IMG/VR virus record: IMGVR_UViG_3300029945_000001
Location: 62,001 to 126,000 of that record
DNA length: 64,000 bases
Direction: 5' to 3' (one strand)
The notes beneath the pieces are model-generated. The model saw only the letters and a list, made by a program, of their open reading frames with translations. It was not told the origin of the DNA and did not search any database. This document shows positions 11,650 to 64,000 of the stretch, piece after piece (position 1 is the stretch's first letter; every line of letters begins with the position of its first letter). A program made the translations under genes and the position numbers.

Positions 11650-11936
11650 TTTAATTATATGCGCATAGTAGTACATACAACGTTTTAAAAGAAATCTGCG
11701 CACTTATATCTTGTGAAACTAAAATATGTATTTTGTTAAATGATAGAGTGGGCGATAGCCCACTCTATCATCATTTTCTTATATTGATTAACTTTATTGA
11801 CTTGTTCTTATGACTTTAGTTTTTTCAAGTTCAAATGAAACACACAAGATAGATCTGAGGATTAAACGAAGAGTTTTTAAGAAAAACTCTTCGACCGAAG
11901 ATTAATTTATTTATATAAAAAATATTTTATTTATTC

Positions 11937-18347: not shown

Positions 18348-21254
18348 ATGACGGTTCTTTATAAAGAAGATTGGGTAAGGAAAAACGCATTTGTTCATTC
18401 TAATACACAAAATAAGTCATTTATTAGAGCAAGTTTATTATTAGAAAGTATGGGAATTAAGAATTGTCTATTTCCATTAACTATCTATGATAAAGACTTA
18501 ATGAATATAGATCCTCATAAATTAAATGATAATTCAGTAGAATTAAGAATGAGAATAGCTATTGAGTGTAAACGAAATGTTTGGTATTATGTAAGAGAAG
18601 TTGTTAGAGTTGGTGCACAAGGTTCAGATCCTATTCCATTTAATGCAGATCGTGGTAATATAGCCATGATTTGGGTATTTGAAAATAATTTCCATTACAT
18701 GAGTATCCAGCCCAGACAGACTGGAAAAGAACAACCATTAACAGCTAATGTTAAGACTCCAAATGGTTGGATAAAAATGGGTGATATTAAAGTTAGCGAC
18801 GATGTCATTGCCCACGATGGAACAACTGTAAAAGTAAAAGGTGTTTATCCGCAAGGAATTAAACCTGTTTACAAAATAACTTTTGAAGATGGAAGATCTA
18901 CAGAATGCGGTGAAGAACATCTTTGGAAGATCTATAATAAATATGAATTATCACAGAATCCTACAACAGAGGTCGTTTCATTAGATAGAATAAAAGATCT
19001 TATTAATGATTATCCTAATATAAAATCTTTATTAAGTATACCCCTTATTACATCAGAAATAAAAGACGATGTTAATCTTCCAGTAGATCCATATATGTTT
19101 GGTAATTTATGTAGAGGTGAAAATATTCCAGAAGATTATTTAAATGCATCAACTTCTCAGAGGTTATCACTTCTTAGAGGTATTATGACGAATTTATTTA
19201 TATCAAATAAAATAGGAGATATTTCATATTCTGTAGAAAGTTTAAAAGCTGTAAATAATATAAAATATTTAGTCCGTAGTTTAGGCGGAATATGTAGAAG
19301 TGTTGAAAGAGATGATTCTTATGATCTTTATATCAAGTTGAATAACCAACAGAATAAATTAAGTTTAGGTATTTCTAATATAGAATTTGTAGGATATAAA
19401 GAAACACAATGTATTGAAATTGATCATCCTGATCACTTATATGTAACTGATGATTTTGTCGTTACTCATAATACAACATGCGCTGTTGTGTTAACTTCAT
19501 ATGTTATTTATATTAGAGGTAAGAATTTTAACTTTGGATTATATACTAAAGACAGTGATCTTGTTCATGCAAATGTGCAGCGTTTAAAAATGGTTAAAGA
19601 TAATCTTCCTAAATATCTTATTCATAAGTCTACTAGGGATGCTGATAATAAAGAAGGATTGTCTTATAATGTATTAAATAATAACTATATTACGTTTATT
19701 GGATCTAAAGATAAACAGGCCGCCGATAACCTTGGTCGCGGTATGACCGGACCGGCATATCATTTCGATGAGCCAGCTTATACCAATAATATCAATATTA
19801 CATATCCGGTTATGATGTCTTCTACAAATGCTGCTGTCGAATCTGCTCGTAAAAATGGTATGCCGCATTCAAATATATTGACAACAACAGCCGGTCGTAC
19901 TGATACTGATCGTGGTAAATATGCATTTGAATTATTAACAGGATCATTATCATTCAGTGAAAGATTCTACGACTTAAAGAATAGAAAAGAATTGGAAACT
20001 ATTGTTAAAAATAATTCTGGTAATAATATCATCTCTGGTGTATTCTCGCATCTTATGCTTGGATTTAGTAATGAATGGTTAAATGAAAAGATCCGTAACT
20101 CTAATTCAACACAAGACGAAATTAATAAAGATTATTATAACATCTGGAGTACTGGTTCAGAACTCAGTATCTTGAAACAAGAAATATTGAAAAAGATCAA
20201 TGAAAGTATTAGAGAACCAGATCATGTCGAATTTATTCATGGTTATGTCATTAGTTGGTATATAAGTGAAGAAGAAAGAACGTCAGATCACTTTAAGAAT
20301 AAACAATTTGTTTTGGGTATGGATAGTTCAGAAAATATTGGTAGAGATTTTACAGCATTGGTCATGGTCGATATATCAACACTAGAAGTTGTAGCAACAT
20401 TTAAATGTAATGAATCCAGTACAACTAAAATTGCTATTTTTATTAGCGACTTCTTAGTCAAATATAAAAACGTCTTATTTATTCCTGAAAGAAAAAGTAC
20501 TGGTGGTTCTATTACTGATCAGGTTCTTGAAATCTTTGAGAAATATAGGATCAATCCATTTAAACGTATTTATAATAAAGTGGTACAGGAGAGACAGGCT
20601 AATGAATATAAAGATGTTAAAATAGACGATATTGATCTTTTATTAAAATATCCTGCTATTAGAAGGTTCTTAGGATTCACAACTCAAGAAAAGACTCGTG
20701 AATTCTTATATAAGAATGTTCTTAATAAAGCAGCAGAACTCAATGCAGATAAAATCATTGATAAAACATTAGCAAGTGAACTAAGTTGTTTGGCTATTGT
20801 TAATGGTAGAATAGATCACCAGAATGGTAAACACGACGATATGGTTATTGCATATTTATTGTGCTGTTTTGTTATATTCTTTGGTAAGAATTTAGATTAT
20901 TATGGAATTGACATTTCTGCACTGACTGATAATTACGATGTTAATGGTAATAAGATCGATAAAAGATATAGAGATAAACAGATTGCTTTCAGAAAAGAGA
21001 TTTTAAAATTAGAAGATTTAATGGCAAATACAGCAAGTCTCGTACTAAAAGAATATTATAGAAAACAGATAGAAAATCTCAGAACTATTATTGATGAGGA
21101 TCTTGTATTAGAACCTATTAGTGTTGCTGTTGTTAATAGTGTCGTTGAATCTTATGGTAAGCTTTATTCAGCAAATGAAATCAAGTCTAATGATAATTCT
21201 CCCGTTATGTCAGAAACACAAATGTTAAATCTTGTAAAATTACTTCCATTATAA
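18348..21254 (+). CDS. terL: terminase large subunit (phiKZ gp25-like) containing an intein
   Basis: Walker A QPRQTGK|T split by the intein; GRGMT, HFDEP, TTTAG, GMDSSE, RIDH..GKHDDMVIA. Confidence 0.92.
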   Translation: MTVLYKEDWVRKNAFVHSNTQNKSFIRASLLLESMGIKNCLFPLTIYDKDLMNIDPHKLNDNSVELRMRIAIECKRNVWYYVREVVRVGAQGSDPIPFNADRGNIAMIWVFENNFHYMSIQPRQTGKEQPLTANVKTPNGWIKMGDIKVSDDVIAHDGTTVKVKGVYPQGIKPVYKITFEDGRSTECGEEHLWKIYNKYELSQNPTTEVVSLDRIKDLINDYPNIKSLLSIPLITSEIKDDVNLPVDPYMFGNLCRGENIPEDYLNASTSQRLSLLRGIMTNLFISNKIGDISYSVESLKAVNNIKYLVRSLGGICRSVERDDSYDLYIKLNNQQNKLSLGISNIEFVGYKETQCIEIDHPDHLYVTDDFVVTHNTTCAVVLTSYVIYIRGKNFNFGLYTKDSDLVHANVQRLKMVKDNLPKYLIHKSTRDADNKEGLSYNVLNNNYITFIGSKDKQAADNLGRGMTGPAYHFDEPAYTNNINITYPVMMSSTNAAVESARKNGMPHSNILTTTAGRTDTDRGKYAFELLTGSLSFSERFYDLKNRKELETIVKNNSGNNIISGVFSHLMLGFSNEWLNEKIRNSNSTQDEINKDYYNIWSTGSELSILKQEILKKINESIREPDHVEFIHGYVISWYISEEERTSDHFKNKQFVLGMDSSENIGRDFTALVMVDISTLEVVATFKCNESSTTKIAIFISDFLVKYKNVLFIPERKSTGGSITDQVLEIFEKYRINPFKRIYNKVVQERQANEYKDVKIDDIDLLLKYPAIRRFLGFTTQEKTREFLYKNVLNKAAELNADKIIDKTLASELSCLAIVNGRIDHQNGKHDDMVIAYLLCCFVIFFGKNLDYYGIDISALTDNYDVNGNKIDKRYRDKQIAFRKEILKLEDLMANTASLVLKEYYRKQIENLRTIIDEDLVLEPISVAVVNSVVESYGKLYSANEIKSNDNSPVMSETQMLNLVKLLPL
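18729..19472 (+). mobile_element. class 3 intein (248 aa) with degenerate LAGLIDADG domain
   Basis: EQPL..VKTPNGW.KMGDI start; block B CGEEHLW; block F TQCIEID; block G LYVTDDFVVTHN followed by Thr; W-C-T triad; remnants DPYMFG, RLSLLRGIM, LVRSLGG. Confidence 0.9.
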
Positions 21255-37982: not shown

Positions 37983-39788
37983 ATGTCAACGAAAGATGAA
38001 AAGTTACATGTACTAACGTGCTGTTTTAACCCAGAGAATTATAAAGTTCGATATAAGTTGGATCATGACTTTACTGAATATCTTAAAGATTTCCCTAATG
38101 TTATTCATTATAAAATCGAACTGGCATTTGGCGATCAGGAGTTTGTAACAACATCTATTGATAATCCTAACCATATGCAATTACGTACAAATACTATTCT
38201 CTGGTATAAAGAAAACTTGTTAGAAATTCTACGTAAATCAAAATTACCTAAGGATTGTAAGTTTGCATGGATGGATGCTGATATTACTTTTAGTAATGTC
38301 AATATCATTAATGATACATTATCAGCACTTAATGAAAATAGCATTGTTCATATGTTTGATAAGAAGATTAATCTCGGTCCTGATGAAGAAGAACTTAATA
38401 GTAGTACTGGTAGTATTGCTAAGTATATTAACACTAGTAATTTCGGCGGCGCGTCTGGCTTAGCATGGGCAGCAAATAATGAATTTATTAATGCAATTGG
38501 TGGACTTATCGATTGGTGTATTATTGGTTCTGCCGACTGGTGTATGTCAGCAGCTATGCTAGATTGTTTATCTGAATTGGAGTATGATAAATATAATGAA
38601 TACACCAAACCACTACTTGATGCATGGCATGCTAAATTACAGGAAAATGATATTGGTGTAGGATATGTGCATGGTATATGTTATCATCATTTTCATGGTC
38701 ATAAGAAGGACCGTGGGTATGATTGGCGACATAATATTCTTATGAAACATGAGTTTGACCCTAGTAATGATTTACTTTATTTAGATAATGGACTATTGGA
38801 TATTAGTGTAAAGAAAATGGAATTACGTAATGAATTGCGCGAATACTTCCATAGTCGCCAAGAAGATAACGATGTCGAAAATATACTACATGTAGTAACT
38901 ACGGTATTCAATCCATCTGGTTATAATAGTCGATATTTTCTATATAATCAGTTTAAACGATATATGGCTAAATTTAAGAATGTTGTTCTTTATACAGTTG
39001 AATTAACTATTGGTGATCAGCATCATGTTGTAACAGATAACTATAATCCGCGTCATTTACAACTACATACTAACAATGTGTTATGGTATAAAGAAAATCT
39101 TATTAATGAAGGTATTAAGAAACTAATTCCTGCTTCAGCTAAAAATATCGCATACTTTGATGCAGATATGGCGTATTATGATGATAATTGGCCTATGTAC
39201 ATTGTTGATAAACTGAAAGAGTGTGATGTTGTACAATGCTGGTCGTCTTTGGATTTCTTAGATGAAAATTATAATGTATATAAAACACGTAATAGTTTTA
39301 TGTCAGATTATATGTCTGGTCTGCGTCCATCTTTGGATAATCCATTGGGTCCTCCTGGTCTAGCATGGGCAATGACACGCGAAGCTTATGACAAGATTGG
39401 GAGAATTTATGATAAAAATATTGTTGGTGCTAATGATAGGGATTTCTGCCATATTCTTGTTAATGAACATTACCGAATGCCAGAAACATTGAATGGATAT
39501 GATGAACTTATGAGATATAACAATATTGTACGTGCTGCTAATCTATCATACGGATATGTCGACTTGGTCGCAATGCATTATTTTCACGGACATACAAAAG
39601 ACCGTGGATATGGTGTACGAGATTCCATCTTAAATGACATTGATATATCACAAGATCTTAGTTATGATGAGAATGGGCTTCTTCAGATAGTTAACAATAA
39701 AGACCATATCTACTTAAAACTAAAGAAATACTTCGATTCTCGTAATGAAGATGTAGGACATGTGGTAAAAGACGCTGCTGCTGAATAA
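37983..39788 (+). CDS. tandem-duplicated glycosyltransferase-like (GT-A) protein
   Basis: Two ~295-aa repeats, each with LHV.T..FNP, LWYKENL, DAD (DxD), GLAWA, H.FHG..KDRGY. Confidence 0.7.
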   Translation: MSTKDEKLHVLTCCFNPENYKVRYKLDHDFTEYLKDFPNVIHYKIELAFGDQEFVTTSIDNPNHMQLRTNTILWYKENLLEILRKSKLPKDCKFAWMDADITFSNVNIINDTLSALNENSIVHMFDKKINLGPDEEELNSSTGSIAKYINTSNFGGASGLAWAANNEFINAIGGLIDWCIIGSADWCMSAAMLDCLSELEYDKYNEYTKPLLDAWHAKLQENDIGVGYVHGICYHHFHGHKKDRGYDWRHNILMKHEFDPSNDLLYLDNGLLDISVKKMELRNELREYFHSRQEDNDVENILHVVTTVFNPSGYNSRYFLYNQFKRYMAKFKNVVLYTVELTIGDQHHVVTDNYNPRHLQLHTNNVLWYKENLINEGIKKLIPASAKNIAYFDADMAYYDDNWPMYIVDKLKECDVVQCWSSLDFLDENYNVYKTRNSFMSDYMSGLRPSLDNPLGPPGLAWAMTREAYDKIGRIYDKNIVGANDRDFCHILVNEHYRMPETLNGYDELMRYNNIVRAANLSYGYVDLVAMHYFHGHTKDRGYGVRDSILNDIDISQDLSYDENGLLQIVNNKDHIYLKLKKYFDSRNEDVGHVVKDAAAE

Positions 39789-44514: not shown

Positions 44515-44636
44515 ATATGGGTACTACCTGGGTAATTCCAGGTAGTACCATTTTTAATTCAATATCATTTTAAGTATATATTACTTTATTGGTCAAATCT
44601 TGACTAATTTTGTTTCTCCTTTTGAAAGGACATCAC

Positions 44637-45689
44637 ATGTCTCTGAACGATTCTAAAGTTGCCCCCGGTATTCCGTCTTTTATTGTTTCTACCCAGCGGC
44701 GGGCACCTGAAGTCCAGACGATCATTGCTGCCAAAAATGCTCCTACGATTTCGTTTTATTTCTGTGGTGGTACTGGCATCAATACTTACAATCGTGTTTC
44801 GATGTTGCTTCCCGAATCTGCCCATATTCAGATCTTCGATACTGCCGATAAATCGAATCGCATCGACACCAATATCGATGTTACGATTCTGACGCCGGCC
44901 GCCGTCGGTTCTGGCGGCGATCGCAATGAAAACAGCCGTACTATCGCCGCTGCCTTGTCTGAAGTCGACCACGTGAATGAAGACATTGCATTTGTCGTTT
45001 TCGGCAAGTCTGGCGGTTCTGGCTCTGTGATCGGTCCGTTGTGGGCCAAAGAACTGCATCGTCGCGATCAGAGCATTCGTATTATCGGCATTGCCATCGC
45101 CGACCACGAATCCTCGCAGCAGCATTCCGACAACATGAAGGGTGCCACTAAGTCGCTGATTAGCATCTGCGAAAAGAATGGCATTTCTATTCCGCTCATC
45201 ATCTACGACAACAAGTATGGGCGGAATATCGTCGACAAGGAAGTCACCAATCTGTTCAAGATGTTTCTTCAGATTTTCACGACGCAAATCAACGAGATCG
45301 ATCCGTCTGATTTCCTGAATTTCATCGCGCACAAGTCGACGACGCCCGGCATCAAGTGCCTGAATGTGCGATGCACCAATTCAAACGAGATCGTCAGCTC
45401 TGCGATCCAGGAAGATTCTGATGTCTATGAATCCATTCTGACTATCATCGGTTCTACCGATGCAGAGTCCGAGTTCAAGCAGGTGTCGGCGACCAGGTCG
45501 TTCAGTGGCATCTTCGAATCTCCTGATTTCCCGTCTATTCGTCTGGCCATTTCCGAATTTTCTTCAAAGTTCGAAGAGCTGGCCAAGGAGACCGAAGATC
45601 ATCTGAATTCGCTTAAGCAGGCCAAAGCCGCTCAGAACAAAGCTTCGGTCTGGAAAGTTTCCGGCGACGAAGATGACCTGATCTCATAA
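44637..45689 (+). CDS. phuZ: phage tubulin PhuZ
   Basis: FCGGTGIN, GSGGDR, tubulin signature GGSGSVIGP, IDPSDFLNF, acidic C-terminal tail; GAAAGGA RBS before ATG 44637; early promoter at 44577. Confidence 0.9.
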   Translation: MSLNDSKVAPGIPSFIVSTQRRAPEVQTIIAAKNAPTISFYFCGGTGINTYNRVSMLLPESAHIQIFDTADKSNRIDTNIDVTILTPAAVGSGGDRNENSRTIAAALSEVDHVNEDIAFVVFGKSGGSGSVIGPLWAKELHRRDQSIRIIGIAIADHESSQQHSDNMKGATKSLISICEKNGISIPLIIYDNKYGRNIVDKEVTNLFKMFLQIFTTQINEIDPSDFLNFIAHKSTTPGIKCLNVRCTNSNEIVSSAIQEDSDVYESILTIIGSTDAESEFKQVSATRSFSGIFESPDFPSIRLAISEFSSKFEELAKETEDHLNSLKQAKAAQNKASVWKVSGDEDDLIS

Positions 45690-56521: not shown

Positions 56522-57034
56522 ATGTCTGATATTCAATTTGATCGTGAAAAAGTCACTGCTTTCTTAAAAAAAGTATGGTAAGTTTAATAGAATAAGTCCC
56601 ATTACAAGAAAGATAGTTGAACGAGGAAAACGAAAAGCGTGTTTCTCGAACTCACTAACATATGCTATTTTAAATTTTGAAGATGTCGGTTACATCGAAG
56701 GATTAGTAGGTAGTAATTTTGTTGAAAATCCTTTAGAGAAAGCAAGACTTCATGGTTGGAATGTATTTAAAAATATGGATGTTTTTGAGCATTGTTTTGA
56801 TAAAACTCCTATTTATTTTGATAAAACATGGACTATCGTGGGCAGTGTAGTGGACTGTTTTACTATGGTGTTGAAATATGTCCTCATTTTGCTCACATGG
56901 TTATTGGTTTACAATTCGATAAAGATAGAAGCAAACCTGGTGGTTATTCTGTTTTAACATACGAACCTTTTCTCAATGGAGAATTTAAAGAATCGGAATG
57001 GCGACCGTATGGCTATGAAATAATAGAATCATAA
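56522..57034 (+). pseudogene. phage gene with Cys-His-Asp-like motifs broken by two compensating frameshifts
   Basis: MSDIQF..FLKK, +1 shift at the A7 run 56566-56572, then KYGK..KACFSNS..YIEGL..LHGWN..DKTW, then -1 shift near 56830 to DYRGQ..YYGVEI. Confidence 0.6.
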
Positions 57035-57099
57035 GAATATAAGGGGGAATAATATTCCCCCTTAAAACATTGTATAGATTCTTTTTATTAGGAGGATAC

Positions 57100-59214
57100 A
57101 TGTTTTCTATCCTAAATATTTTTTCTATAAAAGTAGAAGAAACTCCAGGTTCTAAATTTGTTACTCTTTCGAATATACAATCAAATAATTTAAGACGAGA
57201 TTTTGTTAAGACATTAGGGTCTCCACTTATTGAAAAATATATGTTACATAAAGCAACATATAATAAATTTGTTATTCATAAGTTTTTTATACCAGATCTC
57301 TACTATATATTAACTAAGATCTTGCTGACAAAAGGGCATATATATACAACTAGATCACACATTAAGGATCTCTTAAAACAAATAGAATTACATACTTGGT
57401 ATAAGTCTGCTTTTGAGCCACCAAAATCAGTACCTTTAAATCTAAGTAGATTGTCTGAATTGTCTAGGCCATTACTTCCTATTCAATTGGAAGCATTAAA
57501 AGAATATAATTTAAAGATTCCTAAGTTAAAATTAAGAGGTTTCTTACTGGATGCAGCGACTGGTAGTGGTAAATCTGGTATGTTACTTGCTATGGGTTTA
57601 TGTTCAGAAGCTAAATTCAAAGTTATTATTTGTCCAAAACATACGATTTCAAAAGTATGGGTCGATGAAGAACTTCCAAAGTCTTTTGGTAAGAAGAATA
57701 AGTTGAAAGTATTTAGGTCAGATGAACAAGATGAAATCGTTCCTGGTTATGATTGGTATTTTATTCATTATGAAGCTATTGGTAAACTATTACAATTCTT
57801 TCATAAACATAAATATCCTTCAGTGTTTATTGGTATAGATGAGTGTCATAATCTTAATGAATTAGGTTCTATGAGAACCAATATTTATATTGAATGTTGT
57901 GAAGCATCAAATGCACAAAACATCGTTCCGGCATCTGGTACTCCACTGAAAGCACTTGGTAGAGAAGTTGTGCCATTGTTACAAGTTACAGATCCGTTAT
58001 TTGATGATTATGCTAAAGATAGGTTCTTAAAAATCTATAGTAGATCGGCAGGATCTGCTGCCCATATCTTACAGAATAGAATATCATTAGTTTCACATAC
58101 AATTCCTAAGTCTGCTATTATGGGATCTGAAAAACCCATTGAAAAAACTATTTCTATTACATTACCAGATAGTGACAAATATACTTTACCGTTTTTAAAA
58201 ATAGAGTGTAAGAAATTCTTTATAGATAAAATGACAAAATATGATAAAGAGATGGATGTACATGAAAAACTATTTATATCGGTTATAAGAGATCACGAAA
58301 GAACATTAAAATCGAAAGAAGATCTTCATGAGTTTAATGTATATCTCGATTATATTAATAAGATAAAGAAAGGATACGATCCTATTACCATGGGTTTCAT
58401 GTCTATTTATTGTAATACTTATGAAAAGACTAAGATTATACCCAATCTACCTAAGGATATAAAAGATAAGTTTATTAAATCTAAATCAGTTGTTAAATAT
58501 GTTAAGATGGTTGTTATGGGAGAATGGTTAGCAGAAATAGGTAGGAAAAGAGTAGAGCTACACAAAGAACTTATTAGACATGCAGGCCTTGATGAAATTG
58601 TTAAAAATGCTGAAAAGAAAACTATATGTTTTAGTAATTATGTTGATGCTATTAAAGAAGGTGAAAGATATTTTAAAGAAGCCGGGTTTAATCCTCTTTG
58701 TGTTTATGGTGATACGAATGCAGATCTTGGTAATATCATAGATAAATTTAAATCAGACAAAACAGTAAATCCATTATTAGCAACAATACAATCTATGTCT
58801 ACTGGCATAACTCTCATTGTTGCAAATATTATTATTTTCTTTAATCTTCCATTTAGAGATTATGAAATGGAACAAGCTATTGCGCGAGCATTTAGACTTG
58901 GACAAGATACTCAAGTTTATGTTTATAAACTATTACTCAATACTAAAGAAGCCAATCTAGCTACAAGACTTGAAGAAATTCTCGAATGGAGTAGATCTTC
59001 TGTTTATGATCTCATGGGACATACTAATAATGAAATGACTAAAGATGAAGATATATTCATTACAGCTATTAATGATAATAATAATATTTCAAGTGATGAA
59101 ATCAAGAAATTGGCTCATAAAGTTGCAGCGAATGAAAATTATGAATTCAATACAAATGCTCACTATTATCAAAATAAATCTTTTTATAATCTTATGTTGA
59201 AATTAAGGGCTTAG
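57100..59214 (+). CDS. SNF2-family (SF2) helicase
   Basis: ATGSGKS, IDECH, ASGTP, QSMSTGITL, QAIARAFRLGQ; AGGAGG RBS before ATG 57100. Confidence 0.9.
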   Translation: MFSILNIFSIKVEETPGSKFVTLSNIQSNNLRRDFVKTLGSPLIEKYMLHKATYNKFVIHKFFIPDLYYILTKILLTKGHIYTTRSHIKDLLKQIELHTWYKSAFEPPKSVPLNLSRLSELSRPLLPIQLEALKEYNLKIPKLKLRGFLLDAATGSGKSGMLLAMGLCSEAKFKVIICPKHTISKVWVDEELPKSFGKKNKLKVFRSDEQDEIVPGYDWYFIHYEAIGKLLQFFHKHKYPSVFIGIDECHNLNELGSMRTNIYIECCEASNAQNIVPASGTPLKALGREVVPLLQVTDPLFDDYAKDRFLKIYSRSAGSAAHILQNRISLVSHTIPKSAIMGSEKPIEKTISITLPDSDKYTLPFLKIECKKFFIDKMTKYDKEMDVHEKLFISVIRDHERTLKSKEDLHEFNVYLDYINKIKKGYDPITMGFMSIYCNTYEKTKIIPNLPKDIKDKFIKSKSVVKYVKMVVMGEWLAEIGRKRVELHKELIRHAGLDEIVKNAEKKTICFSNYVDAIKEGERYFKEAGFNPLCVYGDTNADLGNIIDKFKSDKTVNPLLATIQSMSTGITLIVANIIIFFNLPFRDYEMEQAIARAFRLGQDTQVYVYKLLLNTKEANLATRLEEILEWSRSSVYDLMGHTNNEMTKDEDIFITAINDNNNISSDEIKKLAHKVAANENYEFNTNAHYYQNKSFYNLMLKLRA

Positions 59215-59230
59215 AAAAAGGAGCATCTTT

Positions 59231-59668
59231 ATGGATAAAGATTTTGAATATACTTTTGATACTCTTCCATTTACAGCACCATCCGATGAAGGATTTAGAG
59301 CTGGTGAAACTGATAATTTAAAATGGTATATTAATTGTGAATTACATGAAGTTGTTTCTTACATGGATAATGCTCTTAAAAAAGGATTCGCATTAAAGAC
59401 CGGTAGAGCATATGGTTCTGATGGTAAATTAACTGATCCTAAATATACTGGTCTTTATTATACAAATGAAGATCTTAATAGATATATTGAAAATACAAAT
59501 CAATATCTTAAAGAACATCCAGAACTCAAAGATATAACTGATTCATCTGCTATGATGCCTACTGTTGATACTATTATTAGATCTATGGCAAAGCTTCCAG
59601 ATGATAATATTATTAATATCGAAAGATATAAAAGGCCTCGTCGTGCTATGAGAAATAAAAAAATATAG
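59231..59668 (+). CDS. hypothetical protein
   Basis: AAGGAG RBS. Confidence 0.6.
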   Translation: MDKDFEYTFDTLPFTAPSDEGFRAGETDNLKWYINCELHEVVSYMDNALKKGFALKTGRAYGSDGKLTDPKYTGLYYTNEDLNRYIENTNQYLKEHPELKDITDSSAMMPTVDTIIRSMAKLPDDNIINIERYKRPRRAMRNKKI

Positions 59669-59707
59669 ATAGTATTTATTATATGTTTGTGAAAATGGAG
59701 TCGAAAA

Positions 59708-60031
59708 ATGATTGAAAAAAATATGGACGTCACCGATATCAATGGTGCTAAAAAGAACATCAGCGATCTGAAGGTCTTTGGTAATGGCGATACCTTCCAA
59801 CTTATCTGCAAAGCTAGTTCCCAGGAACAGGGTTGGATGAAGTCGACCAAAGCTATGGAAATCGTTGGTGTTGGCTGTGTTGTCCAGGTGACAACGCAAC
59901 AGCGCAGTCCTGACGGATCGTATGCTGTGGCAGAAGCCGTGACTTTTGTTCCAGGAACAAAGATCATCGGTGATGCTATCAATGGTCGTCGGATCGTTAT
60001 TTTCAATTACAATGATACCGATATCGAATAA
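59708..60031 (+). CDS. conserved phage protein of unknown function
   Basis: GNGDTFQLICKASS..GWMKSTKAM..GC.VQVTTQQ..AEAVTFVPG; GGAG RBS. Confidence 0.7.
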   Translation: MIEKNMDVTDINGAKKNISDLKVFGNGDTFQLICKASSQEQGWMKSTKAMEIVGVGCVVQVTTQQRSPDGSYAVAEAVTFVPGTKIIGDAINGRRIVIFNYNDTDIE

Positions 60032-60057
60032 TATTTGACTCAGTTGATATGGAAAAA

Positions 60058-60147
60058 GGATGGGTGGCCGAGTGGTTTAAGGCAACGGTCTTGAAAACCG
60101 TCGTAGGTGTGAGCTTACCGTGGGTTCGAATCCCACCCCATCCGCCA
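60058..60147 (+). tRNA. tRNA-Ser(UGA)
   Basis: GGATGGG/CCCATCC acceptor, CTTGAAA anticodon loop, long variable arm, TTCGAAT, encoded CCA. Confidence 0.97.
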
Positions 60148-60216
60148 TGTTAAATAAGTTTCAAAATATTTATACATATATATTAATTTATTGGAACCTG
60201 ATCATAAAAAGTTAAA

Positions 60217-61639
60217 CTACAGTTGAATTTCACAGTGTAGCAACCTTCTGCTCTGATCCGCACCGCCCCGCTGTGATCCGTTCTCCAGGAAAATGAGTGT
60301 CCTTTCTCATTTTAGTGTATTAGTCAACTGTGGGCTCTCGACCAAGGTGATGAAAATCATCTAAACCTGGGTATATGTTGAGAGTATAATTAAGATAGTG
60401 TTGTGACGAAGGTAACATCCGCGCCCTTCGCGTCAGGACGGCTAACCACATGCAGGTCAGTGTGCTAGCACAACACCGTAACATCTGCCACTAACATGCA
60501 ATCCGGCGACTATCAGTTTTCGAAGCATGTTTTAAAAGTCCTGATAATGCAGATGTATAGCAAATATCAAGTCGACTTGTAGAAATACAACATTCTGGTC
60601 AAGGTGCATGGAATTAACGGACCTAAACACCTTGTTGCGTCGGTTGACTTGAGAGTTCTCGTGTGGAGTTGTTGTCAATGCCGTGTCCTGGTCCTTGGAG
60701 GGGATGACGCCGTAGAAGATACCAATATGGAATACCGGAATATTCCCACATGAGCACGCTTTGTTTTCATGAGTTTTCTTTCTTTGTCCAAGTTACTGAA
60801 GATGATCTATAGCCATAGATCGAAACCTAGTTACGACGATGGTCTAACAGGCAGGACAAAGTACTGACCAGGTGTGCTGGCGCTGATATTATGCGACGTT
60901 TTATCGTTGCTGTAGATGCTGGCATATCGAAGATGTTTGTTGTGGTAAACACGCCGTTGAGATCAGCTATAGATGATCGATGATGTGGCGGTGTGCAATG
61001 AGATGATCATACGATTCCCAAGAAGGGAACTGTGATTATCTATGACTTATACACGACAGTGATCCATATGTGATCCATTGTGTGTTTGTTCTTTACATTG
61101 TTAATACCACGACGAACGTAATAACTGTGTGTTGTCTGGATAAGGGTCATGTATCCCGCAATCTGGTATCGCACTAACTCTGGTAGATATACAGTTGAGA
61201 CCGTGTCTCTAAATCTACAAGTGAGCATGTGTCTGGTGGGTTTGGGCTGAAAAAATGCCATCTGATCCACCAGACACATCTCGCGAAACCTCTTAAGTGG
61301 CGATACCGTTAGACTGAGACCCAGCTTGCTGACTAGCATTTTGTGCAGTTGGCTATGCGCGATTTATTTCGGGCATCTTCTGGCAGATATGTCGTTCTCC
61401 ACGAACCCTCCAGATCAGAGGACTTGCTCAAGATTGGTATCGTAGAGCAGGTAACTAATTTGTCCTGTAAACTATGTGATGTCGGAAAAGTCAGATCCGA
61501 TGATCTGATCAACATCATACTATCGGATGTAATGCCCCCATGGATGTTAATAGCATTTGCATTATGAGATCGGCAGATATACACATCTGATAGGAGTCGT
61601 ACCCCACACGATGAGCTCTGTGGAATCCAGAGCATCTGC
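60217..61639 (+). ncRNA. structured non-coding block A (back-to-back RNA modules)
   Basis: No credible ORF; about a dozen consecutive domains, each closed by a stem, mostly of 8-13 bp; promoter-like TATATTAA at 60179. Confidence 0.7.
60782..60861 (+). ncRNA. type I hammerhead ribozyme
   Basis: GTTA-CTGAAGA-t-GATCTAT(agcc)ATAGATC-GAAA-CC...GG-TC^TAAC, with stem I extended by CTTTGTCC/GGACAAAG. Confidence 0.85.
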
Positions 61640-61641
61640 AA

Positions 61642-61730
61642 GCGCGTATGGCGAAGCTGGCTGAAACGCATCAGACTTAAAATCTGACACATAAGAAACA
61701 CCGTGGGTTCGATCCCCACTACGCGCACCA
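61642..61730 (+). tRNA. tRNA-Leu(UAA)
   Basis: GCGCGTA/TACGCGC acceptor, TCAGA-CTTAAAA-TCTGA anticodon arm, T arm, CCA; variable region long but weakly paired. Confidence 0.9.
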
Positions 61731-61789
61731 TGAGGGGGTGTAAGTTATAACTTACACCCCTCCACCAACAATTTTCGATGACATACAAT

Positions 61790-61865
61790 GAGCACGTAAC
61801 TCAGTTGGTAGAGTACTCGACTTTTAATCGAGATGTCATGGGTTCGAGCCCCATCATGCTCACCA
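61790..61865 (+). tRNA. tRNA-Lys(UUU)
   Basis: CTCGA-CTTTTAA-TCGAG anticodon arm, 76 nt, CCA; one C.A mismatch in the acceptor stem. Confidence 0.92.
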
Positions 61866-61938
61866 TTTTTTTAAAACAAGAGACGAGCTTATCTATGTCT
61901 TCTTTTAGATATTGATAAACTCATGTTATAAAGGAAAT

Positions 61939-62014
61939 GGACGCGTAGCACAGCGGTTAGTGCCGACCGCTCATAACGGTCTGGTCGTAGGTTCGAATCC
62001 TACCGCGTCCACCA
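61939..62014 (+). tRNA. tRNA with CAU anticodon, probably tRNA-Ile2 (reads AUA after lysidine modification)
   Basis: GGACGCG/CGCGTCC acceptor, GACCG-CTCATAA-CGGTC anticodon arm; lacks initiator features. Confidence 0.85.
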
Positions 62015-62029
62015 ACCTTTTTCCATAAC

Positions 62030-63174
62030 GGTCTAGTTGGAAGTTCAGATCTCTCCGTACTGTAATAGGTAACCTCAGGAGATATAAGCATGACCAGATC
62101 ATGCAGGTTCGTTCTTCATAGATTGAACTTCTAAGACCACATCTGAGGTGCAATGCCTCGGCAGAGATAGCTATGTCATGTAGCATAAGTAAAAAAAACA
62201 CCAACGATGAAGTTGTACTCTCTAAAGAGTTAATGAACATGTTCAGACATCTTAGGTGAACATTTACACCTTCAAAAAGATGGTAGCAACAGTATGGGTG
62301 AGAACAAAGCCATCATGCTGGATATCTGGTAACAGTGTCCAGACCCATGTGCCCCCAAGAAACCATTGCGCTACGAGGATCTAGTGGAATTGATGCCATG
62401 CTTCGCATGCGCACAGGTTATAATAACCACATTGTCCTTATCTGAACATTTTTATTGACTCTCTCGGAGAAAACCCTCGTTTGTTGAAATGTTTATCACA
62501 AAGCTGTTATGACTCAATGACATAACAGTTTACCGCTTAAGGTTAACCATCTATCCCTCATCACCGTAGTACGCCTAGGAGTTGTCCTATGTGGTCCAAA
62601 ATGATGAATGATGAGCGGTGGCGAACAGCCGGGTTTGGAGACTGTGTGATATGGCCTCCTAACTGGGCTCTGTTGTTCTTTCATGCATTGACACCCAGTG
62701 TATCGAGAGAATATCGGTCCGTCTCGAACGGACAACTTTCCTGCTTTAGATCGTATGTTTTGGCATATGTCTTAATCCGCACCGGTCCGGCCGATGTATG
62801 GATATGGGCGTAACTCGTCAACGATCTGCTAACAGGCTGAAGAACATGGAAGGTATACCAGGACTACGATCGCCGGCTCTAACTTAAGTCATCTGGAGTC
62901 ACTCAGGGACTATCCTGCGGTGAACATACGATGAGAGTTATCTTGGGATCATTTCCGTATACACACAACTGCTGTGTCCATAAGTGTTCTGTGTCTGAAA
63001 GCAAGGCATGAAGTGATTTTGTCACCGCCAACCCGCTATGTGGGAGATCCGTGAAAAGGTCTCCCACTACGGTTTCTTTAGTGTAGATTAAGGTGAACAC
63101 CGAACACGGAATGGGCCTCCGCGCAACACAATCCCCCGATGTTGCTATGTTCGGTGTTCTCCTTAGTTTATACA
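62030..63174 (+). ncRNA. structured non-coding block B
   Basis: 20/21-bp stem 62227-62247/62441-62461, 12-bp stem 63095-63106/63148-63159 and many internal hairpins. Confidence 0.65.
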
Positions 63175-63242
63175 TATTAAATTCTTCAGGCAGCTGCTTA
63201 TTTTTTATTTCAAAGATAAATATATATTAATACATTGAATTC

Positions 63243-63322
63243 GCCGCAGTATCTCCTTGGCCTTCTAAGCTATTGAAAGAGTAACTGGACACATGGGGGT
63301 TCGAATCCCTCCTGCGGCGCCA
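63243..63322 (+). tRNA. atypical tRNA-Arg(UCU)-like RNA lacking a canonical D arm
   Basis: Perfect acceptor GCCGCAG/CTGCGGC+GCCA, T arm GGGGG-TTCGAAT-CCCTC, anticodon loop CTTCTAA; only 8 nt between acceptor and anticodon stems. Confidence 0.7.
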
Positions 63323-63393
63323 ATCATTTAAAATATTCTAATCCGGGATCGTCGGTCTGAGTCTGACCTGGAGACCACTAAGATACCATATAT

Positions 63394-63438
63394 CTTCTAA
63401 GCGGCAGGTCGTAGGTTCGAGTCCTACTGGGATCGCTA
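63394..63438 (+). pseudogene. 3' half of a canonical tRNA-Arg(UCU); 5' half missing
   Basis: CTTCTAA-GCGGC-AGGTC-GTAGG-TTCGAGT-CCTAC-TGGGATC-GCTA with no matching 5' acceptor, D or anticodon strand. Confidence 0.7.
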
Positions 63439-63872
63439 AGCTGCCATACATCTTCTTCAGTTTCGGGTCCTTCTGAGTAAGGCATTTGAGTATGCACACC
63501 GATCCATGAAAGTGGGGACAGTGTATCGGTTCTTTTAAAAGTTTTGGCTCCGTTAACTGAGTCTGGACTGCTCACCGGCATGTATGTGTCAGTGTTGTCG
63601 GAAAAGCATACAAATGCATTAATGGTTAGAGGGTGTCCATCTTCGGATCGGCATTTTGGCCATAGTCGCTAGAAATCAGTGAAACGGGCTGGTCTCGGGA
63701 TAAATTGTAAGTCTGACGACCGAGATAAGATTAATGACTTACCAAAGTCCTGGTGTGTTAAAAAACTTATGGTGATGTAACCAGGGATGCGAACTATGTT
63801 TGCCATCGGACGCCAAGCGATCGATGAAACCATTCTAAATTCCACTTAACTTTTAGGTCGATGTTATCGGGC

Positions 63873-63909
63873 TGTCACATGCATGGACGTAATGTCCATG
63901 TATGTGACA
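63873..63909 (+). terminator. hairpin ending the RNA cluster
   Basis: TGTCACATGCATGGAC-gtaat-GTCCATGTATGTGACA followed by TTATTTTTT. Confidence 0.75.
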
Positions 63910-64000
63910 AGTTCATTTATTTTTTAATACATTTTGAGTTTTATACAAAAAATAAATATATATTACTTATTTAGAAATATGGAGTGACTATCATGAATTA

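What the first reader, a model, noticed from the sequence alone, without database searches (positions are those of the whole stretch)
60782..60861. Complete type I hammerhead ribozyme embedded in the RNA array
Seen: all core elements are in order. Stem I GTTA (60792-95)/TAAC (60845-48); CTGAAGA (60796-802); one extra U; stem II GATCTAT/ATAGATC with loop AGCC; GAAA (60822-25); stem III ACC/GGT; GUC triplet, giving predicted cleavage after C60844. Stem I continues past an internal loop (AA/AGGCA) into an 8-bp helix, and loop II GCC can pair with GGC of that internal loop. Known: CUGANGA/GAAA/NUH is the hammerhead core, loop II-stem I contacts typify fast natural hammerheads, and an extra base after A9 occurs naturally. 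Inference: it cuts the polycistronic RNA without host RNases, and the extended stem I could keep the two products associated.
Basis: partly seen in the sequence, partly recalled or inferred. Interest (0 to 1): 0.8.

Follow-up and report, generated by a model that had tools for sequence, protein, structure and literature searches.

The report
Hammerhead ribozyme in jumbo-phage RNA island
A small self-cutting RNA (a type I hammerhead ribozyme) sits inside the tRNA and non-coding-RNA island of an uncultured peat jumbo phage, and an abundant, highly folded ~800-base RNA begins exactly at its predicted cut site in environmental RNA data.

Summary
Window 60782-60861 (+) holds a full type I hammerhead: the CUGAAGA and GAAA cores, the A15.1:U16.1 pair and a GUC cleavage triplet. 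Stem I has 4 bp, stem II 7 bp and stem III 3 bp. There is one extra U after A9, an 8-bp outer helix, and a 3-bp contact between loop II and the tail.

Chance expectation is about 0.002 per window. Rfam finds nothing, but a control shows Rfam also misses almost all comparable phage hammerheads.

Pattern scans recovered 54 other hammerheads with the same unusual stem III signature (CCUAG...CGAUGG). Of the 55 including the window, 35 carry the same extra U, and their stems covary. A model built only from other phage hammerheads hits the window at 33 bits (E about 1e-7).

In peat metatranscriptomes no RNA contig crosses 60844/60845, and one begins exactly at 60845. DNA runs hold the whole stretch; RNA runs hold at most the 3' half.

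The 3' product (60845-61641) is a strongly structured, abundant RNA that abuts tRNA-Leu.

Caveats: the hammerhead fold is not the predicted minimum-energy fold, this locus has no sequence variants, and the chemistry of the RNA end is unknown.

Verdict: a new member of a known ribozyme class, in an unusual context.

The parts
60174..60187 (+). Phage promoter-like motif (AAATATATATTAMT family); likely start of the transcription unit that contains the hammerhead
   Evidence: The motif occurs 18 times in the window against 2.3 expected. Almost all copies are on the + strand just upstream of ORFs. Copies lie at 60174, 63218 and 63954. Its function is inferred.
60782..60789 (+). 5' strand of the 8-bp outer helix (extension of stem I)
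   Evidence: Pairs perfectly with 60854-60861. It forms in the predicted fold of the precursor.
60792..60795 (+). Stem I, 5' strand (GUUA; positions 2.4-2.1)
   Evidence: Pairs with 60845-60848. Aligned as stem I by model R1.
60796..60802 (+). Catalytic core C3-A9 (CUGAAGA)
   Evidence: Read directly from the sequence. Invariant in the family alignments A2 and A3.
60803..60803 (+). Extra U between A9 and G10.1
   Evidence: Read from the sequence. The same insertion is present in 35 of 55 subclass members, including tandem neighbours that the search pattern did not select. Literature.
60804..60821 (+). Stem II hairpin (7 bp, G10.1:C11.1 at its base) with loop II AGCC at 60811-60814
   Evidence: It is present in every predicted fold.
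60822..60825 (+). Core G12 A13 A14 plus A15.1
   Evidence: Read from the sequence. Invariant in A2 and A3.
60825..60843 (+). Stem III. Proximal pairs ACC/GGU, conserved internal loop UA/GAU, then distal pairs G60830:C60837 and U60831:A60836 closed by a UACG tetraloop.
   Evidence: The CCUAG...CGAUGG signature is shared with 54 other hammerheads, whose distal helix covaries.
60844..60844 (+). C17; predicted scissile bond between 60844 and 60845
   Evidence: Follows from the hammerhead numbering. An RNA contig of run X2 begins at 60845, and no contig in the four runs crosses the site.
60845..60848 (+). Stem I, 3' strand (UAAC; positions 1.1-1.4)
60849..60853 (+). Internal loop (tail) AGGCA. GGC at 60850-60852 is complementary to loop II GCC at 60812-60814 (candidate pseudoknot).
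   Evidence: The complement starts one A after stem I, the same position as the 4-7 bp pseudoknots of most A2 relatives examined. The general rule is in PMC3088659.
60854..60861 (+). 3' strand of the outer helix. The same bases belong to the closing helix of the mature RNA.
60826..60851 (+). Competing hairpin (10 bp, two bulges) that buries the cleavage site; the predicted minimum-energy alternative to stems I and III
60845..61641 (+). 3' cleavage product: a 797-nt non-coding, strongly structured, abundant RNA that ends at the 5' end of tRNA-Leu
   Evidence: The fold has a z-score of -6.7. No gene was called here in the public assemblies. RNA contigs with 0 mismatches have depth 18-151. No Rfam match and no match in GenBank phages.
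61459..61468 (+). Intramolecular partner of 60851-60860 in the cleaved product (helix swap with 60782-60789)
   Evidence: Inverted repeat I7. Predicted folds of the product versus the precursor. Prediction only.
61642..61730 (+). tRNA-Leu(UAA) directly following the long RNA
   Evidence: One RNA contig runs from 60875 to 61725 without a break.

Best explanation
Window 60792-60848, extended by the 60782-60789/60854-60861 helix, is an active type I hammerhead ribozyme. It belongs to a phage-borne subclass with an extra U after A9, a loop II to 3'-tail pseudoknot, and a CCUAG...CGAUGG internal loop in stem III.

Proposed sequence of events:
1. The ribozyme is transcribed as part of a long non-coding precursor. 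That transcript probably starts at the phage promoter-like motif near 60174-60187 (inferred).
2. The ribozyme cuts itself after C60844 (inferred from anatomy and family; consistent with RNA data).
3. The cut creates the 5' end of a 797-nt highly structured RNA (60845-61641). That RNA runs up to, and in part of the molecules into, tRNA-Leu.
4. The upstream fragment carrying the ribozyme is lost. (Shown: it is absent from the RNA assemblies.)
5. The freed 3' strand of the outer helix re-pairs with 61459-61468 and closes the large RNA domain (predicted only).

The ribozyme therefore acts as a built-in 5'-end maker for a phage non-coding RNA, not as a device that holds two RNA halves together.
For: 1. 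Anatomy. All core nucleotides and all three helices are present, with canonical pairs next to the core.

2. Chance. About 0.002 comparable motifs are expected per window.

3. Family.
- A scan of viral contigs with a core pattern returned 87 stretches. About 25 distinct sequences among them fold as type I hammerheads, often in tandem, and most have the extra U.
- A model (R1) built from 19 of them, without the window, scores the window at 33.2 bits (E 1.4e-7). The next hit scores 10 bits.

4. Subclass.
- A pattern demanding only the core plus CCUAG...GAUGGUC found 16 non-self viral and 48 non-self metagenome stretches, where about 0.2 would be expected by chance in the viral set.
- Stem I and the distal stem III were not imposed by that pattern, yet 94% of cells pair, against 67% in shuffles and 30-49% when the partners are slid. 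Eight pairs show changes on both sides.
- The pseudoknot partner sits at the same place as in the relatives.

5. RNA.
- In four peat metatranscriptomes there is zero contig coverage over 60713-60844. Depth is 18-151 just downstream.
- The contigs begin at 60845 (exactly), 60854, 60875 and 60881, all with 0 mismatches.
- For the stretch 60713-60976, 18 DNA runs hold 100% of the sampled words. The best RNA runs hold 0.45, 0.45, 0.40, 0.40, 0.35 and 0.35. A value of 0.44 is expected if the RNA starts at 60845.

6. No copy of the phage promoter motif lies in the ~650 nt between 60187 and 60845 (its only copies in 60000-63200 are at 60174 and 63218), and sigma-70-like hits are at chance level.

7. 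A parallel case. A subclass member with the same short distal stem III lies in the RNA island of a 327-kb contig, in the order hammerhead, 584-nt RNA, tRNA-Leu.

8. An extra nucleotide at this position is known in natural hammerheads, and U there increases the rate.
Against: - Under nearest-neighbour energies the hammerhead fold is 6.5-8.4 kcal/mol worse than a competing hairpin (60826-60851). It is not the minimum-energy fold at any transcript length tested.
- By contrast it is the minimum-energy fold in 18 of 19 of the first relative set (the other within 0.9 kcal/mol). In the subclass, the MFE keeps stem I closed in 42 of 55, by a cruder check of its outermost pair only.
- Stems I and III are short and A/U-rich. 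The pseudoknot has only 3 bp, where relatives have 4-7.
- Rfam models give no match even at E<=10. This is uninformative, because they also miss the relatives.
- All copies of this phage in the databases are identical over the island. No close relative exists, so this locus itself offers no covariation.
- Only one of the four laid contigs starts exactly at 60845. Contigs show presence, not molecule ends, and the 5' chemistry (OH or phosphate) is unknown.
- The first family set was ascertained with a pattern copied from the candidate, and with a descriptor that requires pairing. The R1 score and the A2 covariation are therefore partly circular.
Confidence: 0.75

Rival explanations
1. The motif is a decayed or very slow hammerhead relic. 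The RNA boundary near 60845 is instead made by host or phage ribonucleases. Candidates are RNase III acting on the competing hairpin stacked on the outer helix, or RNase E/G cleavage or exonucleolytic trimming that stops at the closing helix of the large RNA.
For: - The competing hairpin 60826-60851 is the predicted minimum-energy fold and places 60844/60845 inside a helix.
- The distal stem III is truncated to 2 bp, against 5-6 bp in most relatives.
- Three of the four contigs begin 9-36 nt downstream of 60845.
- The first predicted pair of the mature RNA is at 60848, so trimming to the structure would give a similar end.
Against: - Every catalytic nucleotide and every core-adjacent pair is intact.
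- The exact coincidence of a contig start with the predicted scissile bond would then be an accident.
- Runs X7 and X40 hold a share of words that fits a start at about 60845 rather than 60875.
- About a quarter of subclass members also lack the hammerhead fold as their minimum-energy fold.
- Energy models ignore the core's tertiary pairs and the pseudoknot.
Confidence: 0.15
2. The hammerhead-like motif is a chance arrangement inside a GC-richer, hairpin-rich RNA region and has no catalytic role.
For: - The island is full of stable hairpins, so a hairpin flanked by short motifs is more likely there than in shuffled sequence.
- A second descriptor hit in the window (11855-11928) shows that the descriptor can fire in A/T-rich spacers.
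- Rfam is silent.
Against: - Expectation is about 0.002 per window.
- The candidate shares non-core features with 54 natural hammerheads: the extra U, the CCUAG...CGAUGG loop with the unimposed C before GAU, and the position of the pseudoknot partner.
- R1 gives E 1.4e-7.
- The RNA boundary lies at the predicted site.
Confidence: 0.05
3. 60845 is a transcription start site, so the hammerhead is never part of the abundant RNA's precursor.
For: RNA contigs cannot tell a primary 5' end from a processed one. No contig covers 60713-60844.
Against: - No copy of the phage's over-represented promoter motif lies between 60187 and 60845.
- The only sigma-70-like hit nearby (60864-60892) would start transcription downstream of the observed contig starts, and such hits are at chance frequency.
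- Upstream RNA (60391-60712) is present in three of the four runs.
Confidence: 0.05

Closest known systems
Type I hammerhead ribozymes of phages and prophages with a loop II to stem I pseudoknot (Perreault et al. 2011, PMC3088659)
   Same: The same core, the same open-stem-I topology, and a pseudoknot between loop II and the sequence just 3' of stem I. Both occur in phage polycistronic transcripts and often lie between units that are then separated.
   Different: Published and newly fetched relatives sit between small protein genes, typically 20-30 nt upstream of a ribosome-binding site, with no tRNA nearby. This one sits between non-coding RNAs in a tRNA island. It also has weaker stems I and III, a 3-bp pseudoknot and an additional 8-bp outer helix.
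CChMVd (+) viroid hammerhead with an extra nucleotide between A9 and G10.1 (De la Pena and Flores 2001, as summarised in PMC1636495 and PMC3705267)
   Same: A one-nucleotide insertion at exactly the same core position. U at that position was reported to raise the trans-cleavage rate 3-4 fold.
   Different: The viroid hammerhead is type III, its natural insertion is A, and it processes rolling-circle multimers. Here the insertion is U, in a type I ribozyme of a DNA phage.
Theta (HDV-like) ribozymes next to tRNAs of gut phages (Kienbeck et al. 2024, PMC10879173)
   Same: A small self-cleaving ribozyme embedded in a phage tRNA region and proposed to process the RNA array (abstract only).
   Different: A different ribozyme class (HDV-like, not hammerhead). 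By my recollection, not checked in the paper here, those ribozymes sit directly beside tRNAs and trim tRNA ends. Here the ribozyme makes the 5' end of an ~800-nt RNA.
GOLLD and ROOL large ornate RNAs of phages and prophages (PMC5737381; bioRxiv 10.1101/2024.12.08.627333)
   Same: The 3' product is a large (797 nt), strongly structured non-coding RNA. It is encoded by a phage, next to tRNAs and probably co-transcribed with them.
   Different: No Rfam match to GOLLD, ROOL or any other family, even at E<=10. The two papers checked here (PMC5737381 by term search; the cryo-EM preprint by term count only) do not link a hammerhead to those RNAs; no wider search was made.
HHphage of halovirus HF2 (discussed in PMC3088659)
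   Same: A phage hammerhead whose predicted cut lies within a few nucleotides of the mapped 5' end of a major transcript.
   Different: That transcript is a polycistronic mRNA, and that ribozyme carries insertions near C3. Here the product is non-coding.

Membership tests
Hammerhead ribozyme | Conserved core: C3 U4 G5 A6 N7 G8 A9, G12 A13 A14, A15.1:U16.1, and H (not G) at position 17 | tested here: met
   CUGAAGA at 60796-60802, GAA at 60822-60824, A60825:U60843 and C60844. There is one extra U (60803) between A9 and G10.1. This is a documented natural variant and the majority state in the subclass.
Hammerhead ribozyme | Three helices meeting at the core, with standard pairs directly next to it (10.1-11.1, 1.1-2.1, 15.1-16.1) | tested here: met
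   G60804:C60821, U60845:A60795 and A60825:U60843. The stems have 4, 7 and 3 bp.
Hammerhead ribozyme, type I | Stem I open; stems II and III closed by loops | tested here: met
   The order along the strand is stem I 5' strand, core, stem II hairpin, GAAA, stem III hairpin, cleavage site, stem I 3' strand.
Hammerhead ribozyme | Tertiary contact between stem II loop and stem I that aligns the two helices | tested here: inconclusive
   GCC (60812-60814) is complementary to GGC (60850-60852). The complement starts one A after stem I, as in most relatives, which have 4-7 bp. Three base pairs can arise by chance, and pairing cannot be shown in silico.
Hammerhead ribozyme | Match to curated covariance models (Rfam Hammerhead_1, _II, _3, HH9, HH10) | tested here: not met
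   No hit at the gathering score or at E<=10. Control: in 12 loci with about 25 descriptor-positive phage hammerheads Rfam reported none at the gathering score. In a locus with 7 tandem copies it reported one descriptor-positive copy, below threshold at 24.7 bits, plus one weaker hit elsewhere at 15.8 bits. The test lacks sensitivity for this group.
   33.2 bits, E 1.4e-7, over the full model length; the next window hit scores 10 bits. Caveat: the training set was found with a pattern derived from the candidate, so the core part of the score is partly circular.
Stem III 'CCUAG...CGAUGG' hammerhead subclass (defined here) | A 3-bp proximal stem III, a UA/GAU internal loop, then a distal helix starting with G:C. 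Stems covary across members. | tested here: met
   The window has ACC-UA-G...C-GAU-GGU. The C before GAU was not imposed by the pattern and is invariant in all 15 aligned sequences. Covariation in stem I and the distal stem III is shown. There are 55 unique members. The window's distal helix is unusually short (2 bp plus a tetraloop), as in L150.
Hammerhead ribozyme | Site-specific self-cleavage giving 2',3'-cyclic phosphate and 5'-OH ends | not testable with these tools
   Indirect evidence only: an RNA contig starts at 60845, none crosses the site, and RNA runs hold at most the 3' half of 60713-60976.
Hammerhead ribozyme | Conservation and compensatory change among orthologues of this very locus | not testable with these tools
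   All 10 fetched copies of the island are 100% identical. The nearest helicase relative is 44% identical in protein. The one relative neighbourhood that could be read just downstream of the helicase (L009, 34% identical) has no RNA island there, and L013 (36%) also has none; the 44% contig held no DNA.
GOLLD / ROOL / other known large RNAs (for the 3' product 60845-61641) | Match to the family covariance model | tested here: not met
   Between 60845 and 61641 no match approaches a gathering score at E<=10; the only hits are two weak microRNA-model matches at about 61217-61290 (21-23 bits against gathering scores of 43-48), taken as chance. No similarity to GenBank phages apart from tRNAs.

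The most novel reading that the evidence does not exclude
The hammerhead is the maturation switch of a new class of module in very large phages: promoter, spacer RNA, hammerhead, large ornate RNA, tRNA-Leu.

Before the cut, the ribozyme's outer helix holds the future 5' end of the large RNA. Cutting releases that strand, which then closes the ~620-nt core of a 797-nt RNA. That RNA has no known relatives and is among the most abundant phage RNAs in peat metatranscriptomes.

A second, unrelated huge contig (327 kb; the same sequence in an 870-kb assembly) carries the same order: hammerhead, ~580-nt RNA, tRNA-Leu. This suggests a recurrent, ribozyme-dependent way of making giant non-coding RNAs in jumbo phages. 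It might relate to transcription inside a phage nucleus, since the window encodes a PhuZ-like tubulin.
Probability: 0.3. Interest if true: 0.75.

Novelty: new member of a known kind. Interest (0 to 1): 0.55.

Why it matters
Hammerheads are known in phages, but their reported role there is to separate protein-coding cistrons. Here one appears to set the 5' end of a large, highly expressed, unclassified structured RNA in a jumbo-phage tRNA/ncRNA island, and environmental RNA data support this.

If confirmed, four things follow:
- It is a natural case of ribozyme-defined ends for a giant non-coding RNA.
- It marks an ~800-nt RNA worth structural study, in the way GOLLD and ROOL were studied.
- Curated hammerhead models miss a large, covarying phage subclass, so phage ribozymes are under-counted.
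- It offers a testable helix-swap mechanism that couples cleavage to folding.

Tried and rejected
1. Rfam at the gathering score and at E<=10 gave nothing for the site. I rejected this as evidence against the ribozyme after the control on relatives.

2. Synteny route to orthologues. Helicase homologues (36-44% identical) were looked up in their contigs. L009 and L013 have no RNA island next to the helicase, and the third contig held no DNA.

3. Strain variation. All copies of the phage are identical over 57000-64000.

4. BLAST of the island against GenBank phages returned only tRNA hits.

5. Other hammerhead types and other cores in the island. CUGANGA occurs at 62837 and 63713 (+) and at 63460 and 63189 (-), but none gives a folding hammerhead. 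Type II and III descriptor hits elsewhere have minimal 3-5 bp stems and were taken as chance.

6. The repeat 60836-60859 / 62821-62844 (75%) lacks the U16.1 needed for a second cut site. The 19-nt complement of the core at 63443-63461 (16 of 19) is also unconvincing. Both are at the frequency expected by chance for a 4-kb region (plus my own estimate).

7. I looked for sequence similarity between the window's long RNA and the one downstream of the hammerhead in L150. There is none beyond tRNA-like parts.

8. The 601-aa ORF 37983-39788 was tested as a possible phage-nucleus shell protein. It has no Pfam or PHROG match.

9. A look-up of L150's ORF with the longest TTG start failed. It succeeded with the ATG start.
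Full report
**What the window is.** The window comes from an uncultured myovirus of about 230 kb with about 30% G+C, found repeatedly and without variation in peat metagenomes.
- It encodes phiKZ-like virion proteins, a tail sheath (about 27% identical to jumbo phages of Serratia, Klebsiella and Vibrio), a ribonucleotide reductase, an SNF2-type helicase and a PhuZ-like tubulin.
- Positions ~60040-63990 are a gene-free island of 44% G+C.
- The island holds tRNA-Ser, tRNA-Leu, tRNA-Lys and tRNA-Met, two weaker tRNA-like elements, and long stretches without any known RNA family.
- An A/T-rich motif (AAATATATATTAMT) occurs 18 times in the window against 2.3 expected. It is almost always on the + strand just before ORFs. 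Copies lie at 60174 and 63218 inside the island, so it is very probably the phage promoter.

**The observation.**
- I add a distal stem III element: G60830:C60837 and U60831:A60836, closed by UACG.
- A descriptor for type I hammerheads finds the site. In 4000 block shuffles it finds 0.002 motifs of equal stem quality per window, and 0.0015 with the outer helix.
- The descriptor's only other hit (11855-11928) consists of A/U-only stems in an A/T-rich spacer. It competes with a 12-bp terminator-like hairpin, so I regard it as chance.

**Why Rfam is silent.** No Rfam hammerhead model reports the site, even at E<=10 on a 401-base query. This proved uninformative.
- In 12 viral loci that hold about 25 well-folding hammerheads, Rfam reported none at the gathering score.
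- In a locus with seven tandem copies, it reported one descriptor-positive copy (24.7 bits, threshold 34) plus one weaker hit elsewhere at 15.8 bits.

**Relatives.**
- A core pattern taken from the candidate matched 87 viral stretches. About 25 distinct sequences fold as type I hammerheads, often in tandem between small same-strand ORFs.
- Tandem neighbours that the pattern did not select also carry an extra U (or A) after A9.
- A model built from 19 of them (A2, R1) scores the window at 33.2 bits (E 1.4e-7). The next hit scores 10 bits. This test is partly circular, because of how the set was found.
- A cleaner test used only the core plus the odd stem III signature CCUAG...GAUGGUC. It gave 16 non-self viral and 48 non-self metagenome stretches, where about 0.2 were expected by chance in the viral collection.
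- Together with the window these make 55 unique sequences. The base after A9 is an inserted U in 35, absent in 17, C in 2 and G in 1.
- Stem I and the distal stem III were not part of the pattern, yet they pair in 94% of cells. The figure is 67% in shuffles and 30-49% with slid partners, and eight pairs change on both sides.
- The C that pairs with the G of UAG is invariant although not imposed.
- In most relatives a 4-7 bp pseudoknot links loop II to the bases starting one or two nucleotides after stem I. The window's GGC sits in exactly that place.
- The candidate is therefore a member, by homology of peripheral elements as well as of the core, of a real and covarying hammerhead subclass.
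- The literature agrees on three points: phage hammerheads and such pseudoknots are common (PMC3088659); an extra nucleotide between A9 and G10.1 occurs naturally; and U there accelerates cleavage (PMC1636495, PMC3705267).

**RNA evidence.** Twenty-one peat metatranscriptome runs hold parts of the island. Only Logan contigs could be laid, on four runs.
- Coverage is patchy in a way that DNA contamination would not give. It is zero on the flanking genes and on the spacers.
- No contig covers 60713-60844 in any run.
- Perfectly matching contigs of depth 18-151 begin at 60845 (run X2), 60854 (X4), 60875 (X1) and 60881 (X3).
- As a second test I asked which runs hold 60713-60976. Eighteen DNA runs hold all sampled words. 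The best RNA runs hold 0.45, 0.45, 0.40, 0.40, 0.35 and 0.35. An RNA that starts at 60845 can hold at most 0.44.
- The cut form therefore dominates, and the ribozyme-bearing 5' fragment is not retained.

**The product.** Positions 60845-61641 fold with a z-score of -6.7. The stretch has no called gene, no match near any Rfam gathering score (only two weak microRNA-model hits) and no relative in GenBank phages.
- One contig runs on without a break to 61725, close to the 3' end of tRNA-Leu. At least some molecules therefore keep the tRNA.
- In the predicted fold of the precursor, 60854-60861 pairs with the ribozyme's 60782-60789.
- In the product alone, 60851-60860 pairs with 61459-61468 and closes a ~620-nt domain.
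- This helix swap is a prediction, not an observation.

**Weak points.**
- The hammerhead fold is 6.5-8.4 kcal/mol less stable than a competing hairpin (60826-60851). That hairpin uses a second GUUA copy to bind the UAAC of stem I.
- The hammerhead fold is not the minimum-energy fold at any transcript length tested.
- In the first set of relatives the hammerhead fold is the minimum-energy fold in 18 of 19, the other lying within 0.9 kcal/mol. In the subclass the MFE keeps stem I closed in 42 of 55, by a cruder check.
- Energy models leave out the core's non-canonical pairs and the pseudoknot, so this is a caution rather than a refutation. It leaves room for slow or regulated cleavage.
- There is no sequence variation at this locus. 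The end chemistry is unknown, and only one laid contig starts at the exact base.

**Context compared with relatives.**
- Almost all relatives lie between small protein genes, commonly 20-30 nt upstream of a Shine-Dalgarno-like sequence, with no tRNA in the fetched DNA.
- One exception is striking. L150/L162 comes from a 327-kb contig, and the same sequence lies in an 870-kb assembly. Its hammerhead has the same shortened distal stem III (2 bp plus a tetraloop) and scores 41.6 bits.
- That hammerhead lies in a ~6.6-kb gene-poor island. The island holds tRNA-Phe, a CUA-anticodon tRNA, a group I intron in a tRNA-Ser-like gene, and tRNA-Arg.
- The hammerhead is followed by 584 nt of non-coding RNA and then directly by tRNA-Leu.
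- The order hammerhead, long RNA, tRNA-Leu is the same as in the window. The long RNAs share no detectable sequence.
- In a distant jumbo relative (L009), a weaker hammerhead-like motif precedes a strongly structured 300-nt RNA that ends in a terminator. Its stems I and III are good and its stem II is poor.

**Verdict.**
- The interpretation as a self-cleaving type I hammerhead is well supported (confidence about 0.75).
- The proposed tethering role is not supported.
- The ribozyme itself is a new member of a known kind.
- What is unusual is its place and apparent job: making the 5' end of a large, abundant, unclassified phage RNA.

Noticed in passing
window 60845-61641 (and 61642-61730): A 797-nt non-coding RNA with a very strong predicted structure (z -6.7). 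It is the most deeply covered stretch of the island in two of the four peat metatranscriptomes laid, has no Rfam family, and directly abuts tRNA-Leu. It is a candidate new large structured phage RNA.
   Followed up: partly
window 60391-60712, 62632-63030, 63543-63809: Three further stretches of the island appear as perfectly matching RNA contigs in several metatranscriptomes. The middle one has depth of about 13-108. None matches a known RNA family.
   Followed up: no
window 63243-63319 and 63382-63435: Two weak tRNA-like elements (29.2 and 24.7 bits; ARAGORN calls neither). The second looks like a 3' half of a tRNA. A promoter-like motif lies just upstream at 63218.
   Followed up: no
window 9265-63967 (18 sites; e.g. 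25826, 30880, 35629, 44572, 50552, 60174, 63218, 63954): The A/T-rich motif AAATATATATTAMT is about 8-fold over-represented. It is almost always on the + strand just upstream of ORFs, so it is a likely phage promoter consensus.
   Followed up: partly
window 11855-11928: A second descriptor-positive type I hammerhead-like motif (stems of 7, 5 and 3 bp, no insertion). All its stems are A/U-only, and it overlaps a 12-bp terminator-like hairpin (11867-11895). Model R1 does not hit it. Probably chance.
   Followed up: partly
window 44610-45689: An ORF matching phage tubulin PhuZ (PHROG E 1.4e-29). This hints that the phage may be a nucleus-forming, phiKZ-like jumbo phage. No shell-protein match was found for the 601-aa ORF 37983-39788.
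   Followed up: partly
window 18348-21254: A 968-aa ORF. Terminase large-subunit matches cover only its N-terminal ~130 residues and residues ~700-840. In between are matches to DnaC-like loader and primase families. It may be an interrupted or mosaic terminase gene.
   Followed up: no
L162 3366-10000 (= L150; contig Ga0247724_1000002, 326.6 kb; same sequence in an 869.6-kb ENA contig, L161): A ~6.6-kb gene-poor RNA island in a very large contig. It holds tRNA-Phe, a CUA-anticodon (suppressor-type) tRNA, a group I intron inside a tRNA-Ser-like gene, and tRNA-Arg. A tmRNA/tRNA-like 3' end lies just before a hammerhead (8030-8087), which is followed by 584 nt of RNA and tRNA-Leu(CAG).
   Followed up: partly
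L009 6165-6515: In a 280-kb distant relative of the phage, a hammerhead-like motif (25.8 bits; good stems I and III, poor stem II) precedes a 300-nt strongly structured RNA (z -5.0) that ends in an intrinsic terminator. It lies in a 512-nt intergenic gap.
   Followed up: partly
L042 1853-5188; L090 12305-13550; L027, L053, L086, L102, L132, L144, L146: Viral contigs with 2-7 tandem type I hammerheads, one between nearly every pair of small same-strand ORFs. Rfam's Hammerhead_1 model reports almost none of them, so this phage subclass is under-detected by the curated models.
   Followed up: partly
L046 2533-2588 (-): A Twister-P5 ribozyme (62 bits) lies on the same strand of the same viral contig as a hammerhead (1329-1387, -). 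One phage therefore carries two self-cleaving ribozyme classes.
   Followed up: no
window 63443-63461 vs 60795-60813: A 19-nt stretch 2.6 kb downstream is complementary (16 of 19) to the hammerhead core and the 5' side of stem II. By my estimate this is about what chance gives in a 4-kb region, so it was not pursued as an antisense regulator.
   Followed up: no
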